Notes under the pieces: model-generated | Told to the model about the DNA's origin: nothing | What the model saw: only the letters and a program-made list of their open reading frames with translations | The model's database searches: none | In this document: positions 13,133-19,487 of the stretch, one piece after another | Layout of the letters: every line of letters begins with the position of its first letter | Numbering within the stretch: the stretch's first letter is position 1 | NCBI GenBank assembly: GCA_038496445.1 | Contig: JALMLS010000322.1 | Span: 682,001 to 746,000 of the forward strand | Length of the DNA stretch: 64,000 bases | Source: Trichosphaerium sp. ATCC 40318 | Lineage: Eukaryota > Protista > Tubulinea | Direction: 5' to 3' | Made by a program: the position numbers and the translations under genes

Positions 13133-13789
13133 ATGACCTCTGGCGCTAAAGAAGAACAAGTTCCTGGCGAAGAAAAAACTGCCTATTTCACACCATACGA
13201 CTTGCGCGGCTTTTGGCAAGGAGACAAAGGTCCCAATGGATTAGAAATGCTTCAAATAACACTTACAGATGGTTTTCTTGTAGCAACAAAGGTATTTACC
13301 GAAACTTGTTTAAACGCCCAAAACTATCGCTCTTTGCAGATTACAGGTGGTGGCCATGTGCCTGCTGGTAAAGTCAGTTGGAAAGTAGACCGCAAGCTTG
13401 GTGTTGGATCCATACAGGTATGCCGTAATTTGTTGTTAACAACACGTGACAGAAAGTTATTATTGTTTGGTTGCTAAAAAAAACGGTTATTGTTTGTCGA
13501 ACAAAGAGCTGTTGATAGCTTTCTTGTGATAGTATTTTTGATGTCAATAGGTAGCAGAGAAAGGCTTTAAAAACAGTCAATGGAGGAAAGGCAAAATAGA
13601 AGCTGTTATCAGTCCTGATAATTTTTTTTTCGTTTGGTACCTTTTTTTTTTGTATAAAGTCGTTACTGCTGACACTGTATGATCAAAAGGGAAAATGTAG
13701 AACGTGAATTTAAGCGGTTACATATTAGTGGTGATAACAATTGCGGTTACACTTTTGATCATGATCCTGTAAATTATGACTATGATTAA
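13133..13789 (+). CDS. stand-alone Cyclin-D1-binding/DUF3506 (FBXO31/EXECUTER C-terminal-like) domain protein
   Basis: After splicing: GFWQGDKGPNGLEMLQITLTDGFLVATK-ITGGGHVPAGKVSWKVD, which matches the family pattern GxWxGxYxxHGxE...LxAxKxTGDxNVPxG as recalled. Confidence 0.6.
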
Positions 13790-13954: not shown

Positions 13955-16505
13955 TCACATTGTAAATAAAAATTCTGGGAATGAGTTTCCAAGTCCACTG
14001 AGTGTCTTTGGTTTCTCTAATTTGTTATACACTTTGTCCTACTACATACAAGCTTCAAAGACTCTACTCTTGTATTATAAACCTCTACAAACACGTGAGT
14101 GTCAGCAACAAATAAGAACACTATCATTTGAATAATCTCTGCTTGTATCAACTTGTAATCGTCTGTATCTGAGATACAGTTAGTGATTTCGTGCATTAGG
14201 TTTTCTTAAGTCTAACACTTTGCGCCTTTAACTTGTTTTCAGAAATAATCCAAGACAGGAGTACGTATTAATATTAAAGATTTTGGCGTAATAGACGACA
14301 TGTCTATTTTCTCTGAAATGGGCGCTCTAACACTTGGCATTCCTAAGTTTAAAAAAGAAGATTGGGTAAGAAAAATAATGAATTGGTTGGTATATTTCAA
14401 TCAAAAAAACCTATTTACAAGAAATCCAATGTCCACAACACAAAAGCTATTCCATCACAGAAACTACCTCTTCCATAGAATGATTTTTGTAGAATTCGGC
14501 AATATCATGATGATCTGATGGTAAGGCAAGACCACAACGAGTGACAAACTGTAAAGGAAAAAATGAGAAATGGTTCTTTTTTAAATGTAACGAAAAAAAG
14601 ACGTACATTTATTTTGGCTTTAATGATGGGATACACTTCTGCCCATGAGTCAAGTAAAGATTTTAGCTCTTTTGCTTCAGTGTCATAACCATAATCTTCA
14701 AATGTTTTCCATGCAGCTACCATAGCAAAGCCAACAAATGGATAAATACCTTTCGCATTTTTTAGAATCGAAACCCTCTCTTTAACTCTCATAGAAGCTT
14801 CTAGTGCATCTTTACTATGTCCCAATAGATTAAATACCCAAGCAGCGCACGCATCACAGAAAAACTGTGCAATAGGCCTCTCAGGAATAGACTCAGAAAG
14901 AGCTAAAGCTTCAGATATACAAGACAAAGAAGTATTGTAATGTTTTTCGTTATTGGTTTTAACCCAATTACTAACCTATTAATAATACATTAATCGACGC
15001 TATAGTAATATTAACAACATCTCATATCGTACTTCAAACTCTGCCATTGCTTGTAATGCATTCATAAGAGTAGTAATATGATCACCATAAAGAGATGTTG
15101 TTCTTAGTTTTTGACATTGTAATTCAATTGTTTGTTTAGAAAGTTCCATTGATATTTTGTGTTTATATGATGGTATAGTAGGTGTAAACTGACATAATCT
15201 TGCATTCAGGATTTTTATATGTGACGCTAAAGAACTTTCACGAGAATTGCCTATTTGGATGATTAACGATGAGAACAACACTCAGAGTATATGAAGTCAT
15301 TCCAAAAAAGTTGTCTTTTCGTACCTTCACGTAACCTTCTTGCTGCTGTTAAACATGTCATCATTTCATCAGCAAGTGATACAAAATCAAATGCCTTCAA
15401 ACTATTTCCTGAACCAACAAGGTACGACCCCAAAACAAGCAATCCAACTGACACAATTGTTAACAAAAAACAAAACAAAGCCCAAAAAACATAACATGCT
15501 CAAAGTATGCTTTCCTGGCTTGACAACAATTAATACACTTAAAGACAAAAGAGCGTATTAGGTGACTGCCATACAGGAAGAAAAAAAATAGAAATGCAAC
15601 TGACCACGTGGTCAGATGAAACATGGTCAAAACAAAACAATAATTGTAGTTAGATTCGCACCAGCAGTGTCCACAGAAGGTTTGTCTATTATCAAATCCT
15701 TTACCCTCATTGCCATATTAGAGAACTCTCTAGCACGGTGCTTATTGCCCTGAAATAGTTGTTGTACTGCCAGCAATGAATATACACGAAAATTCGCAGG
15801 AGTGGCTGAGTCATCAAGTTAGGAATTTCGAAAAAACCTGATTTGTTTTTGAACTCACTTTTTTGAGAAAAGAAAGCGTCAAAATTAATAGGTCCCAATC
15901 TACATGCCGGTATCTTTGACCCTATGAATGCTGTTGCCATAGAAACACATGATTGGATATTACAAGCGTGAATCAAGCTGACATTTGACAAAAGAATGGC
16001 ACCCTTAACAGAATGAGTTAAAAATCTCAGTTTGTCGGTATTTAATGTGCAAACAAATGCTGTACCTGTGTTATATCCTTTCTTTTAACTCCCCTGGAGT
16101 TTATTGCGAGTACGTGGGGATGCTCTGCGAGAAGAGATTTTAAGTTTTTTTGAGCTGTTTTCTCAATGTTCAAAGCTTCTTGTAACTTCTCTATTTGGTC
16201 ATGTAAAGCTTTTTGCGTGGTTCCTGCGCTTTGTCAATGTTATGACACGCCAAATGCCGACAAGCAAGTTGATAACCGTGAACCGGGTTAAAATAATTAG
16301 CCGACGTACCTCGTTTACGACCACGACGCTTGGCGTTAGTGTACGTACATTTCGTGTTTGATTTAATACAGACGCCTGTTGTTATTTAGATACATGTACT
16401 CTCCGTATTATACGTACCACAGGGGTTGCAATGGTCGCATTTTAGATGTTTTTTACGACACGAAACGCACGAAATTGACGAGTCTTGCTTTTGTTCGCTA
16501 GTCAT
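13955..16505 (-). CDS. Zn(II)2Cys6 binuclear-cluster transcription factor (multi-exon)
   Basis: Spliced motif CVSCRKKHLKCDHCNPC-GVCIKSNTKCTY (C-x2-C-x6-C-x5-C-x2-C-x6-C), then basic KRRGRKR and helical C-terminal exons. The 3' end is approximate. Confidence 0.8.
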
Positions 16506-16917
16506 CAAGTTTCGGCCTGAACGGTTACTTTGGAGTAAGCGAATACGTATTAAAATGGAATGTAAGATTAAAAACTCGGTCAACATTTTTATTATTTTCA
16601 CGAAGAGTGATAACCACAACGAATTCTTCAATTCTATTGTACCTCACTTATAAGCAATACGTACGTTAATACCTTGTTTTAACAAAGTCTGTTACGTTAA
16701 TTAACAGTATTCACTTTAGTACACTAGGAAAGAACTACAAACACTCTAATTAATTAAATTATAAACAATAGTACGCTATTAGTGCAGTTAAAACAAATTT
16801 CTTTGTGAAATAATAAGCAACGCCTTACATCTACACGAGAGTACCCCACTATAGTGTAGAAAGCGGTTTTTACTACTTTTAAAAATATTCCGTTGAATTG
16901 GCTAAATATCGATCAAG

Positions 16918-19066
16918 ATGTCTGGAAGAGTAAAAGTTTTCCGTAAAAAGGATAGTAGAGTAGAAGCACCAACATCAAGCTTACCTGCATTCGAGCCGGG
17001 AAAGAATTACAAGCGAAAATGGCTTCATGACAATTACGGAGGTATTTAATTCATCTAATTAACCTTACGAGACCCTGTAGTTTAATATAACTAACTCTAA
17101 CGCCAGGACAAACAAGCTGTGGCATATCAACGCCTCAAAACCAAAACTTTATTTTCCTTTTCTCGTATAACCACGACCGATACGATAACAGATGGACTGT
17201 ACGTTGATTTACGCATTTTCGATAAGTTTTATTTTTTATCTTCAAAACCACCCAAACTGGTCACCAAAGGCTCATCGTACTTTCTATGAGTACACCATTC
17301 ACACCATAGCAAATTTGAGGCGGTTTTTTTTTGTATTTCAATCAACTAACACTGATTGGTTAAATTATCAATCGAAACTTGGAATTCTCGCGATAAAAGT
17401 CATTACGCATGCTTATGAGAAAAAACCGCTTCATTCCATTGGCAACTTTGTCATCTTTTCGAAGAATTTTGCATTAAGAGTTGAACTATTTTCTCTTTCT
17501 TTTTTTTTTCCGGTTTGATAATTGACCTTTTGCCAGTTAATATTCTTACCTATATTTGTTTAGAAAGATGGGAATTTCATTTACGCTGGAGAAGGAGATG
17601 GAACGTTTACACGTGGGAATAGAGCTTTAAAATTCTCAAGTAAAGCTCTACTTCTATTTTTTGCAGTAAATAATAAGCAAGGCATTGTATGCTTTGTAGG
17701 ATACTTTGATTACGTAAGATATAAACTTATCAAAGCTTCAGGTACCTAAATATACAAAACAATACAAACACTCCACTTTTATTGAGAAAAAACCTCAATG
17801 TTGATCTGCACATCTCACCATGAGTGTTACTCCAACAATCAACGCTACTCTAACCCTTGATTTTTCTGAAGTTTTTTTCCTTTTTTTTTTGGTACAAAAT
17901 GACATCACGTGATTACTTGAAAAACACTTCTTCCAACTCCAATAACAAGACAAAGTTGCCTCAAAATTTCTTAGAGACCATAAATATTAATTATTACTCT
18001 AGGAAGACATAGAAGAGGTGTACAGTTTCATCTTAAGCCAAGAAGAAAAAGTACAATACCCGATTTTGTTATTAAAAGAATGAAGGAAGCACGTGCTGAG
18101 CGTCTAAAAAAGATGGAATATAAAGTACCTGGTGTTGCTGAGAGTGTTTTACAACAGATATGGGATATAAACATTCTAAAGACAAATGTAAAAGATGAGC
18201 CAGATGAAACAAGACCAAAAGAACCAGAACAACAAGTTGTCCAACTGAATGAATCAGAAAAGAAAGCAAGTTATATTAATCTTGTTTCAGATGAAGATGA
18301 AGATGACTTAAATATGGAGATTTTGGAAAAAAGAGAGAAAAAATCTTATGTTCAGTTAGATCTTGTAAGTGATGATGAAGATGAAGAAAATGAACATCAA
18401 CATGAACATGACGGACATGACAGACATGATGATCATGATGTTATAGAAATAGATACAGAAATAAACTATGAACACAACTTTACAGATGAAACAAACAGTA
18501 GAACTACTGTTAATAATAATAACATTGATGACCATCAAAATAATGTAATGGATGTTGATTATCAAGGAGAAAGAGGTTTTCTTGAGGAAGAAGAGGGAGA
18601 TGCTGAAGGAGTTACTCTTGAAGGCCTTGATACAATGGAAGAAGAAGAAGAAAACTCTGATGAAAGAAACAGATTTCAAATTGTTGAAAGACAAGAAGAA
18701 GTTCCACCTCCTCCACGTTATGATTTTGAAGGCCTTGAAGAAATGAATAATGAGGATGATGGACATCAAAACTATGAAGCTGTTGCTTTGAGCTCTGTAC
18801 AGAGAATAATAGTACCAGGTATTATTCTTTCAAAAAAAGTGATAAGAAAGAAAGGACAAACAAATAAGAGGAAGAAAACAAATAGTTCTCAAAATAATGA
18901 TAATAATCAAAGATCAAAAAAAAGAAGACGTTTAACACAGAATATACAGTTAACTCCTGGTATAACTATAACAACAAGAAAAGAACCAAGTTTGCCTGTA
19001 GTAAAACAAGAAGAACAAGAGGACGAACATGTAAGCTTTGCGAACTTCTTACAGCCAAACTTTTAA
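16918..19066 (+). CDS. SRA-like (bacterial McrA/SRA-HNH type) domain protein with an acidic SIM-rich tail and NLS
   Basis: Exons 16918-17041, 17107-17198, 17564-17741 and 18003-19066 splice to FEPGKNYKRKWLHDNYGGQTSCGISTP...IFLFS...YDNRW..DGNFIYAGEGDG.FTRGNRAL...LLLF...FVGYFDY...GRHRRGVQFHLKP. Confidence 0.7.
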
Positions 19067-19487
19067 GCCCACAAAGAAGAAAACCATGTACAATAGTTGT
19101 AATCTAGATAGAACAATAAAAATATTGTCAATTTTTTTTGTGTTAATGCCACAGGAAAGAGCCAGCTCATTGCCCCCCGACTCCATCTGAAATCTATTGC
19201 TAGATGCTCTACTCTTCATGCCCACATTGATACAAGATTATACTCTGTAGTTCGTTGCAAATAATTTTTGGGACCTTAAAGGCTGTTCGATCCGCTTGTC
19301 TTGTGTATCCAAGTTTACATTTGTTTTGCTATAAGCAGAACATGGCTTGTTTTGAAAAATACCATTTCTGCAACAACCAAAATCAACGACAGCCTGTTTT
19401 TCACAAAAGAGGGTTGGGGTTTTTTGTACAAATTTTTCAACCCTCATACTTTTTTATTCGTCACATTAATATTCCCATTGGAAACAA

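What the first reader, a model, noticed from the sequence alone, without database searches (positions are those of the whole stretch)
16918..19066. Restriction-enzyme-type SRA domain rebuilt as a eukaryotic nuclear reader with SUMO-interaction motifs
Seen: this domain is invisible in the ORF track, but four exons splice to F.PG..Y.R..LH..YGG....GISTP....IFLF......YD.RW..DG.F.Y.GEG...F..GNRA......LLLF.......FVG.F.Y........R..V.F.L.P. No HNH nuclease follows. Instead there is an acidic disordered tail with SIM-like motifs (YINLVSDEDED, VQLDLVSDDEDE, VIEIDTE), SUMO-acceptor consensus sites (VKDE, VKQE) and basic NLSs (KKVIRKK, KRKK, KKRRR). Known, recalled rather than searched: this pattern resembles the SRA/PUA-like modified-cytosine-binding domain of bacterial SRA-HNH/McrA-type modification-dependent endonucleases more than UHRF1/SUVH SRA. 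Inference: a horizontally acquired type IV restriction sensor that lost its nuclease and now links modified DNA (host, transposon or giant-virus) to SUMO-dependent chromatin machinery.
Basis: partly seen in the sequence, partly recalled or inferred. Interest (0 to 1): 0.8.

Follow-up and report, generated by a model that had tools for sequence, protein, structure and literature searches.

The report
Amoeba gene with bacterial-type SRA domain
An amoeba expresses a spliced gene whose front end is a DNA-modification sensor domain of the kind bacteria use in restriction enzymes, but without the nuclease, with two base-reading residues changed, and joined to a long acidic tail, so it probably acts as a nuclear DNA-binding adaptor whose ligand is still unknown.

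Summary
Spliced contigs from public runs use all the junctions. The gene has a 5'UTR exon and four coding exons (16918-17041, 17107-17198, 17564-17741, 18003-19066), giving 485 codons.

I searched exon by exon. Exons 1, 2 and 3 and the start of exon 4 match, in order, a profile of the prokaryotic ScoMcrA-type SRA family (PF26348). The hhalign E-values are 9e-6, 1e-4, 2e-8 and 0.02. In a six-frame scan of all 64 kb, the three best hits are these three exons. That family has the SRA fold, closest to ScoMcrA. No HNH or other nuclease follows, and the tail has no cysteine.

The family's near-invariant thumb Gln is Ser, the pocket Asp is Asn, and the finger loop is three residues shorter. Both aromatic pocket walls remain. 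Unchanged 5mC reading is therefore doubtful.

The SUMO link rests on motifs only. Two LVSD-acidic motifs are conserved in a related organism, and the SUMO-acceptor sites occur at chance level. Horizontal origin is likely but was not tested by a tree.

The parts
16728..16770 (+). 5'UTR exon (its 5' end is not defined; contigs begin at 16728)
   Evidence: Contigs X3 rec 7 and X4 rec 11 join 16770 to 16918. There are stops in all frames.
16771..16917 (+). Intron in the 5'UTR, 147 nt, GT..AG
   Evidence: Joint in two contigs.
16918..17041 (+). Coding exon 1: ATG, a 22-residue basic N-terminal extension, then the first SRA segment (FEPGKNYKRKWLHDNYG plus the first base of a Gly codon)
   Evidence: hhalign residues 20-41 to profile 10-31, E 8.9e-6. 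HMM 9.3 bits, reached by 1/2000 shuffles.
17042..17106 (+). Intron, 65 nt, GT..AG, phase 1
   Evidence: Joint in X3 rec 7.
17107..17198 (+). Coding exon 2: thumb loop (QTSCGIS, Ser where the family has Gln), a beta strand, and pocket wall Tyr-Asp-Asn-Arg-Trp (Asn where the family has Asp)
   Evidence: hhalign 3-21 to profile 35-53, E 1.3e-4. HMM 8.3 bits, reached by 0/2000 shuffles. Column mapping.
17199..17563 (+). Intron, 365 nt, GT..AG, phase 0
   Evidence: Joint in X3 rec 7 and X4 rec 12.
17564..17741 (+). Coding exon 3: second pocket wall (FIYAGEG), shortened finger loop (DGTFTRGNRAL), helix and two beta strands
   Evidence: hhalign 2-52 to profile 68-121, probability 95%, E 1.7e-8. HMM 19.9 bits, reached by 0/2000 shuffles; without the motif used for fishing it scores 9.2 bits, also 0/2000.
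17742..18002 (+). Intron, 261 nt, GT..AG, phase 1
   Evidence: Joint in X2 rec 4, X3 rec 7 and X4 rec 12.
18003..18049 (+). Start of coding exon 4: last SRA strand (RRGVQFHLKP)
   Evidence: It aligns at the expected end of the profile (138-148) but is not significant alone, E 0.023.
18050..19066 (+). Rest of exon 4: acidic, Cys-free, low-complexity tail with stop TAA at 19064-19066. No nuclease.
   Evidence: Composition. Pfam finds nothing. The family's linker+HNH profile scores -0.6 bits and there are 0 Cys.
18272..18304 (+). SIM-like motif 1 (hydrophobic core INLV followed by SDEDED)
   Evidence: Only synonymous differences in the contig of organism B.
18350..18385 (+). SIM-like motif 2 (LDLV followed by SDDEDE), a repeat of motif 1 including the preceding KK-SY
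18390..18440 (+). His/Asp-rich low-complexity stretch with in-frame 3-nt indels between runs
   Evidence: tables 3-4.
18833..18931 (+). Three basic clusters (KKVIRKK, KRKK, KKRRR), NLS-like
   Evidence: Judged by pattern only.

Best explanation
Shown: a eukaryotic (amoeba) gene, spliced and transcribed, encodes a 485-residue protein. Its first ~150 residues are a complete ScoMcrA-type SRA domain (Pfam PF26348 kind), a family otherwise found here only in prokaryotes and their mobile elements, usually fused to an HNH nuclease. The nuclease is gone. In its place is a ~330-residue acidic, cysteine-free tail with two conserved hydrophobic-core plus Ser/acidic motifs and three basic clusters. Also shown: the domain keeps the fold-determining residues and both aromatic pocket walls. 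It has Ser for the thumb Gln, Asn for the pocket Asp, a finger loop shorter by three residues, and a further three-residue deletion that removes a conserved His. Inferred: the protein is a nuclear adaptor. The remodelled SRA domain docks on DNA, and the tail recruits partners through its acidic SIM-like motifs. Because the residue that reads the cytosine Watson-Crick edge has changed, the ligand is probably not read as in canonical 5mC/5hmC readers. Binding may be relaxed or retuned to another base. The ancestry is most simply explained by an old transfer of a restriction-enzyme sensor from a bacterium or a virus, followed by intron gain and loss of the nuclease.
For: Splicing and expression. 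Exon-wise homology, collinear on the family profile. In a six-frame scan of the whole window the three best hits are exons 3, 1 and 2. Single bacterial proteins match three exons each, for example a Chloroflexota MAG at 15.0, 12.8 and 15.6 bits. Family identity: all 120 listed relatives carry PF26348. The profile hits ScoMcrA at E 2e-10 and SUVH5 SRA at E 0.0015. An AlphaFold model of a bacterial member (pLDDT 91) matches only SRA structures, with ScoMcrA first at TM 0.76. No nuclease. Changed residues: the profile-to-SUVH5 alignment places family Q25/G27/Y51/D53/Y63 on SUVH5 Q392/G394/Y416/D418/Y428, whose roles are described in PMC4740795. In 208 family sequences Q25 is 97% conserved and D53 97%, with Asn seen once. 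In a sample fished without constraining them, nearly all of 56 members printed with the motif keep GY.D upstream and all show GEGQ. PMC6212794 states that the carboxylate gives the preference for modified cytosine over thymine. Tail: composition and motifs; 5 synonymous and 0 non-synonymous differences over codons 21-127 of exon 4 in a related organism's contig.
Against: No binding, localisation or partner data exist. The fold of the amoeba domain itself was not predicted, because joining the exons was left out. The start of exon 4 is not significant on its own. A Gln two residues upstream of the lost thumb Gln might substitute for it in a flexible loop. For ScoMcrA itself, the authors say the UHRF1/SUVH5 recognition residues are not conserved and that the SRA domain mediates dimerisation (PMC6224610), so mapping residue roles from SUVH5 is an inference. 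The SIM-like motif count is only marginally above shuffles (p about 0.07), and the NLS call rests on pattern alone. No eukaryotic or giant-virus relative was retrieved, so neither the donor nor the age of the transfer is known.
Confidence: 0.55

Rival explanations
1. The domain still flips out and reads 5mC or 5hmC like other SRA domains, and the tail couples methylated DNA (transposons, host or viral DNA) to SUMO-dependent silencing through SIMs.
For: The SRA_ScoMcrA homology is shown. Both aromatic walls, the thumb Gly and the GN.AL helix are kept. ScoMcrA prefers 5hmC/5mC DNA (PMC7461809). Unchecked notes from the same genome report CpG-decay footprints of transposon methylation and a DNMT3-type gene. 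Two strong SIM-like motifs are conserved.
Against: The Asp that bonds the cytosine Watson-Crick edge is Asn, the thumb Gln is Ser, and the finger is shortened. These positions are 97-100% conserved in 208 relatives. The SUMO acceptor sites are at chance level. There is no SUMO data.
Confidence: 0.2
2. The SRA fold has been repurposed. It no longer reads a flipped base and instead serves as a dimerisation or protein-binding module, or as a non-specific DNA clamp, within an acidic chaperone-like or scaffold protein.
For: Several near-invariant functional residues are lost at once. In ScoMcrA the SRA domain mediates dimerisation and did not contact the DNA in the crystal (PMC6224610). The tail is highly acidic (23% Asp+Glu), as in histone-binding proteins.
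Against: Both pocket tyrosines, Trp55 and the GEG turn are retained, which would be unnecessary for a scaffold alone. The N-terminal extension and the segment after the domain are basic, which is compatible with DNA binding.
Confidence: 0.15
3. The gene is a decaying relic of a transferred or transposon-borne restriction gene, with no present function.
For: Conserved residues are lost. No relatives were found in very large protein libraries with exon 3 or exon 4 as the query.
Against: The 485-codon frame is intact across four exons, all introns are spliced precisely, and spliced contigs occur in runs of two or three coded organisms. Only synonymous differences fall across 107 tail codons. The neighbours are ordinary host genes and no transposon features were seen.
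Confidence: 0.06
4. The resemblance to SRA is due to chance or low-complexity sequence, and the N-terminal region is an unrelated lineage-specific domain.
For: Pfam, NCBIfam, PADLOC, PHROGs and PDB phmmer gave nothing for single exons. The large phmmer search returned only spurious repeat proteins.
Against: Those blanks are explained by short queries and by a Pfam copy that found no PF26348 even in the bacterial seeds. Three exons match independently and collinearly, each at p<=0.001 by shuffling, and they are the three top hits in the window.
Confidence: 0.03

Closest known systems
ScoMcrA-type SRA domain (Pfam PF26348 SRA_ScoMcrA) of prokaryotic SRA-HNH / SBD-SRA-HNH type IV restriction endonucleases (ScoMcrA, PDB 5ZMM/5ZMN)
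   Same: All four coding exons align in order over profile positions 10-148 of 156. The shared landmarks are FxPG..Y.R..lH..yGG, GIs, Y.x.W..DG.F.Y.GEG, GN.Al, L.lF, G.F and R.vi.F.L.P.
   Different: There is no HNH or any other nuclease. It is a eukaryotic gene with four introns. The thumb Gln is Ser, the pocket Asp is Asn, the finger is shorter by 3 residues, 4 residues are deleted before the wall Tyr, and a 3-residue deletion removes a conserved His. A 330-residue acidic tail is attached.
Stand-alone bacterial SRA_ScoMcrA proteins (e.g. P0056, 152 aa, on an actinobacterial-type metagenome contig)
   Same: They have the domain without a nuclease. P0056 is among the best pairwise matches to exon 3, at 24 bits.
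   Different: They are bacterial, have no tail, and keep Gln, Asp and the full GEGQ.GD finger.
Eukaryotic SRA readers UHRF1/UHRF2 and plant SUVH5/SUVH6/KRYPTONITE (Pfam PF02182 SAD_SRA)
   Same: The superfamily and fold are the same. The family profile reaches SUVH5 at E 0.0015, and the model of a bacterial relative matches SUVH5 and UHRF1 structures. The general idea is also the same: a nuclease-free SRA domain joined to effector-recruiting parts in a nuclear protein.
   Different: No exon gave a PF02182 match. There is no NKR-type long finger and no RING, PHD, tudor or SET partner domain. The pocket carboxylate is absent.
SUMO-interacting-motif proteins with phospho-SIMs (PIAS, Daxx, RNF4 type; recalled from general knowledge, not searched)
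   Same: There are two copies of a hydrophobic core (I-N-L-V, L-D-L-V) followed directly by Ser and an acidic run.
   Different: The similarity is at motif level only. No SUMO binding was tested, and such motifs also fit CK2-site or acidic histone-binding stretches.

Membership tests
SRA_ScoMcrA (PF26348) | Significant sequence match to the family profile across the domain | tested here: met
   Tested exon by exon against A3 (39 non-redundant members, all annotated PF26348). E-values are 8.9e-6, 1.3e-4, 1.7e-8 and 0.023, and the matches are collinear. Shuffle controls are and the window-wide scan. A score of the joined protein against Pfam's own gathering threshold was not run, because the joined step was left out.
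SRA_ScoMcrA (PF26348) | SRA (PUA-like) beta-barrel fold | not tested
   For a bacterial relative (P0105) the fold is SRA, with ScoMcrA first at TM 0.76.
SRA_ScoMcrA (PF26348) | Near-invariant base-flipping and pocket residues (thumb Gln25, Gly27, Tyr51, Asp53, Tyr63; the SUVH5 equivalents are Q392, G394, Y416, D418, Y428) | tested here: not met
   Gly27, Tyr51 and Tyr63 are kept. Gln25 is Ser and Asp53 is Asn. Gln68 and Gly70 are deleted.
SRA-HNH type IV restriction endonuclease | C-terminal HNH (His-Me finger, four-Cys zinc site) nuclease | tested here: not met
   Pfam finds nothing in exon 4. The family's linker+HNH profile scores -0.6 bits and there are 0 Cys. No hit anywhere in the window.
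Eukaryotic SAD_SRA (PF02182; UHRF1/SUVH) | Match to PF02182 and a long finger (NKR-type) loop | tested here: inconclusive
   No exon piece gave a PF02182 hit at E<=10, but the pieces are short. The finger here is the shortest seen, with 6 residues between GEG and GN.
Eukaryotic SAD_SRA (PF02182; UHRF1/SUVH) | Partner domains (RING/PHD/tudor/UBL or pre-SET/SET) | tested here: not met
   No Pfam family in any exon.
SUMO-interacting proteins (SIM) | Hydrophobic core psi-x-psi-psi or psi-psi-x-psi flanked by an acidic/Ser run | tested here: met
   There are two strong copies and one weak copy (VIEIDTE). Enrichment over shuffles is marginal: 2 observed against 0.39 expected, and 7% of shuffles reach 2.
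SUMO-interacting proteins (SIM) | Physical binding to SUMO | not testable with these tools
   This needs a pull-down or NMR titration.

The most novel reading that the evidence does not exclude
The Asp-to-Asn swap at the position that reads the Watson-Crick edge, together with the lost thumb Gln and the minimal finger, may have retuned a restriction-enzyme SRA pocket from modified cytosine to a thymine-type or oxidised base such as 5hmU. That would make this a new class of eukaryotic base-modification reader. It might work with the transposon-borne dioxygenase genes that other readers noted in the same genome as carrying 'SRA-like' domains.
Probability: 0.1. Interest if true: 0.85.

Novelty: new variant of a known kind. 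Interest (0 to 1): 0.55.

Why it matters
SRA domains are the main known base-flipping readers of 5mC and 5hmC. Eukaryotes were known to use the UHRF1/SUVH branch, while the ScoMcrA branch was known from prokaryotic restriction enzymes. Here a member of the prokaryotic branch has become an ordinary intron-bearing, expressed nuclear-type gene in an amoeba. It has lost its nuclease and has changed precisely the residues that specify the flipped base. This gives a natural experiment on how restriction sensors are domesticated into chromatin proteins. It also gives a simple, testable prediction: reverting Asn to Asp and Ser to Gln should change which base the domain prefers. There is a practical point too. 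The Pfam copy behind the family-scan tool did not detect PF26348, so other 'SRA-like' calls in this genome that follow-up agents could not confirm may deserve a re-test with a PF26348-type profile.

Tried and rejected
1. Exon-wise scans of Pfam, NCBIfam, PADLOC and PHROGs gave nothing, or only noise such as phrog_15103 at E 0.2 and a lasso-peptide model at E 0.39.
2. Exon-wise phmmer against PDB gave only chance hits, GFP and GAPDH.
3. The word-index protein search found nothing with exon 4 or with exon 3.
4. The exhaustive phmmer search of 1.84 billion representatives with exon 3 gave 7 hits. All are FG-GAP or TPR repeat proteins that score through many short stretches, so they are spurious. 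In hindsight that single job would have been better spent on a profile.
5. tblastn of exon 3 against phages and plasmids found no match. The search for related loci with exon 3 alone found nothing.
6. The first DNA pattern (Y.GEG, a 6-residue gap, then GN.AL) fetched an unrelated 123-residue ORF family on phage-like contigs that carries the same motif by chance.
7. The Atlas feature search with exon 2 (30 aa) gave no usable hit. With exon 3 it gave the useful lead: SRA, SRA_ScoMcrA and DUF3427 clusters at 0.86-0.91.
9. A remnant of the HNH domain or its linker was looked for in exon 4 and in all six frames of the window. None was found.
10. A second copy of the domain in the window was looked for. 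None was found.
11. A giant-virus origin was suggested only by one Atlas cluster name. None of the viral-contig relatives retrieved looks like a giant virus or shares the derived residues.
12. The SUMO-acceptor sites were rejected as evidence: 2 observed against 1.6 expected.
Full report
**Gene model**

The region is AT-rich (about 35% G+C) and has no long ORF over the proposed domain.

Contigs from public runs laid on 16700-19300 settle the splicing:
- One 839-nt contig (X3 record 7) skips 16771-16917, 17042-17106, 17199-17563 and 17742-18002. All are GT..AG, and the contig has at most one mismatch.
- X4 records 11 and 12 and X2 record 4 repeat three of these joints.

The runs are not labelled as RNA. 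However, contigs that lack four canonical introns are most simply cDNA.

The transcript has a 5'UTR exon, seen from 16728 to 16770, with stops in all frames. The ATG at 16918 is the first base of the next exon. The coding exons are 16918-17041, 17107-17198, 17564-17741 and 18003-19066, which gives 485 codons. Both split codons encode Gly.

**Why the first searches were blank**

These searches on single exons gave nothing meaningful:
- Pfam, NCBIfam, PADLOC, PHROGs and PDB phmmer.
- The word-index search with exon 4 and with exon 3.
- The exhaustive phmmer search with exon 3, which returned only FG-GAP and TPR repeat proteins.

The only lead was the Atlas feature search with exon 3. Its nearest clusters were PF18491 SRA, PF26348 SRA_ScoMcrA and DUF3427, at scores of 0.86-0.91.

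**Finding real relatives**

A degenerate DNA pattern for Y.GEGQ.GDQ was scanned over viral contigs. The first half of the pattern comes from exon 3 and the second half from my recollection of bacterial proteins. It returned seven ORFs of 270-330 residues.

These ORFs share the amoeba protein's landmarks from end to end. By phmmer they match the SRA region of ScoMcrA (5ZMM residues 259-347, E 5e-6) and the HNH domains of McrA-type enzymes.

The tool's Pfam copy found only HNH and a sub-threshold SAD_SRA in them. Yet the same protein (P0017, an HNH endonuclease of Aquamicrobium) carries PF26348 in the precomputed annotation. The copy behind the scan tool therefore does not detect PF26348, which explains the earlier blanks.

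Wider sampling gave:
- 377 confirmed relatives among GTDB species genomes, mostly Actinomycetota but also Chloroflexota, Bacillota, Pseudomonadota and a haloarchaeon.
- 192 proteins from the word and profile search. The 120 listed all carry PF26348, often together with HNH.

**Exon-by-exon test**

Against a profile of 39 non-redundant members (A3), hhalign gives:

| Piece | Residues | Profile positions | E-value |
|---|---|---|---|
| Exon 1 | 20-41 | 10-31 | 8.9e-6 |
| Exon 2 | 3-21 | 35-53 | 1.3e-4 |
| Exon 3 | 2-52 | 68-121 | 1.7e-8 (probability 95%) |
| Start of exon 4 | 3-13 | 138-148 | 0.023 |

The matches are strictly in order. A local HMM gives 9.3, 8.3, 19.9 and 0.7 bits. Of 2000 shuffles, 1, 0, 0 and 190 reach these scores, and only 3.7% of shuffles give a collinear order.

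The fishing pattern overlapped YAGEG, so I re-scored exon 3 without its first 11 residues. It still scores 9.2 bits at the right place, and no shuffle reaches that.

Scanning all 2718 stop-free segments of the 64-kb window with the family HMM returns exon 3, exon 1 and exon 2 as the three best hits. Wrong-frame and reverse translations score below zero.

Single bacterial proteins match three exons each. A Chloroflexota MAG protein scores 15.0, 12.8 and 15.6 bits, and its FEPG.tY.RK.iHD.YGG start is nearly identical to the amoeba's. Exiguobacterium SRA-HNH proteins share GISTP.

The tail of exon 2 (YDNRWT) and the start of exon 3 (KDG) meet exactly at profile columns 56/57. The split codon between exons 1 and 2 supplies the invariant Gly22. 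The domain assignment is therefore secure without joining the exons.

**What the family is**

The A3 profile hits ScoMcrA at E 2e-10 and the plant SUVH5 SRA domain at E 0.0015. An AlphaFold model of a bacterial member (P0105 domain, pLDDT 91) matches only SRA structures: ScoMcrA (TM 0.76), then AspBHI, SUVH5, KRYPTONITE, MspJI, LpnPI, TagI and UHRF1/2. In the ESM Atlas its nearest clusters are all bacterial PF26348 proteins.

**No nuclease**

Exon 4 has no Pfam domain and no cysteine. It scores -0.6 bits against a profile of the family's linker plus HNH region. Nothing in the window matches that profile.

**The amoeba copy is an outlier**

The profile-to-SUVH5 alignment uses a single offset of 361. 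It places family columns Q25, G27, Y51, D53 and Y63 on SUVH5 Gln392, Gly394, Tyr416, Asp418 and Tyr428.

PMC4740795 describes these residues as follows:
- Gln392 is the thumb residue that fills the gap left by the flipped base.
- Gly394 is a thumb amide that contacts 5hmC.
- Tyr416 and Tyr428 are the two stacking walls.
- Asp418 is the carboxylate that bonds the Watson-Crick edge.

In 208 family sequences these columns are 97%, 100%, 98%, 97% and 98% conserved. I then fished a second sample with a pattern that does not constrain them (DG.F.Y.GEG). Nearly all of the 56 members printed with the motif keep GY.D upstream, and all show GEGQ after it.

The amoeba protein keeps Gly27, Tyr51, Trp55, Tyr63, GEG, Asp71, GN, Phe94, Gly105, Arg128, Phe133 and Leu135. 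It differs as follows:
- Ser replaces Gln25.
- Asn replaces Asp53. The register is fixed by Tyr51 and Trp55.
- Gln68 and Gly70 are missing, through a 3-residue finger deletion.
- Gly replaces Gln72.
- His84 is missing, through another 3-residue deletion.
- Four residues are missing before Tyr51.

The Asn codon AAC lies in two perfectly matching contigs.

PMC6212794 says the carboxylate is what makes SRA pockets prefer modified cytosine over thymine. That an Asn here could relax or retune that preference is my inference.

Two caveats apply. The ScoMcrA authors say the UHRF1/SUVH5 recognition residues are not conserved in ScoMcrA's SRA, and that the SRA domain mediates dimerisation. A Gln two residues upstream of the lost thumb Gln might also compensate for it.

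**The tail**

Exon 4 after the last SRA strand is 23% Asp+Glu, 8% Asn and 14% Lys+Arg, with a net charge pattern of basic, strongly acidic, then basic.

Two near-repeats, KK(A)SY-x-L-x-LVSD followed by an acidic run, fit the phospho-SIM pattern, and VIEIDTE is a weaker third. Two strong hits are observed against 0.39 expected, and 7% of shuffles reach two. The psi-K-x-E sites are at chance level, 2 against 1.6. Three basic clusters resemble nuclear localisation signals.

In the contig of a differently labelled organism (X2, 95-99% identical) the five differences across exon-4 codons 21-127 are all synonymous. The His/Asp-rich stretch (codons 131-140) carries non-synonymous changes and in-frame 3-nt indels. 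The motif-bearing part therefore looks constrained, though the sample is small.

**Context**

The flanking genes are ordinary host genes. A weak Zn2Cys6-cluster exon lies head-to-head upstream, and there is a Cyclin_D1_bind-like ORF. I saw no transposon features.

Unchecked notes from the same genome report CpG-decay footprints over transposons, a DNMT3-type gene, and transposon-borne dioxygenase genes with 'SRA-like' domains that follow-up agents could not confirm. I could not read those loci.

**Verdict**

- The domain call is right: ScoMcrA-type SRA rather than UHRF1-type, and without a nuclease.
- Horizontal origin is likely, because every relative found is prokaryotic or prophage-like. 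The donor and the date are open.
- Unchanged 5mC reading is doubtful because of the changed thumb and pocket residues.
- The SUMO link is a motif-level hypothesis.

**Left out**

Noticed in passing
tool behaviour; seeds L009-L015, P0017: The Pfam library behind search_protein_families reported no PF26348 (SRA_ScoMcrA) even for bacterial SRA-HNH proteins that carry PF26348 in the precomputed annotation. Blanks for 'SRA-like' domains from that tool should therefore not be read as absence.
   Followed up: partly
other pieces of this genome (notes s1-383640, s1-387256, s1-404216, s1-383721): First readers repeatedly noted 'SRA-like' domains behind AlkB-like dioxygenases in CACTA-like transposons, and follow-up agents could not confirm them. 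A re-test with a PF26348-type profile (such as alignment A3) might settle whether they are paralogues of this domain.
   Followed up: no
window 16386-16631 (-): An exon with a CX2CX6C...CX2C pattern gives a weak match to the fungal-type Zn(2)-Cys(6) cluster (PF00172, E 0.0012, below cut-off). It lies head-to-head with the SRA gene, about 100 bp from its 5'UTR exon.
   Followed up: partly
window 13133-13477 (+): This ORF matches the Cyclin D1 binding domain (PF12014) at E 4e-6.
   Followed up: no
window 18390-18440 (+): A His/Asp-rich coding microsatellite-like stretch shows in-frame 3-nt deletions and several amino-acid changes between runs, and between two contigs of one sample (tables 3-4).
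   Followed up: partly
L001-L008 (viral contigs): A conserved 123-residue ORF family on phage-like contigs carries YAGEGTGNT(D/E)EGNIAL. It was hit by chance with the first motif pattern and is not related to SRA.
   Followed up: no
literature (PMC6765204): ScoA3V (Sco5330) has an N-terminal PUA-like domain of a separate clade, restricted to Streptomyces, Nocardiopsis and Micromonospora, and its nicking is stimulated by 6mA. The taxa overlap with the Actinomycetota-rich family found here. I could not test whether Sco5330 belongs to PF26348.
   Followed up: no
L033 (Natrarchaeobius versutus): A haloarchaeal genome encodes the same SRA type at the end of a stop-free frame of more than 500 residues, with a long unrelated N-terminal region. 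The family therefore has architectures other than SRA-HNH. The Atlas also lists a NUDIX fusion.
   Followed up: no
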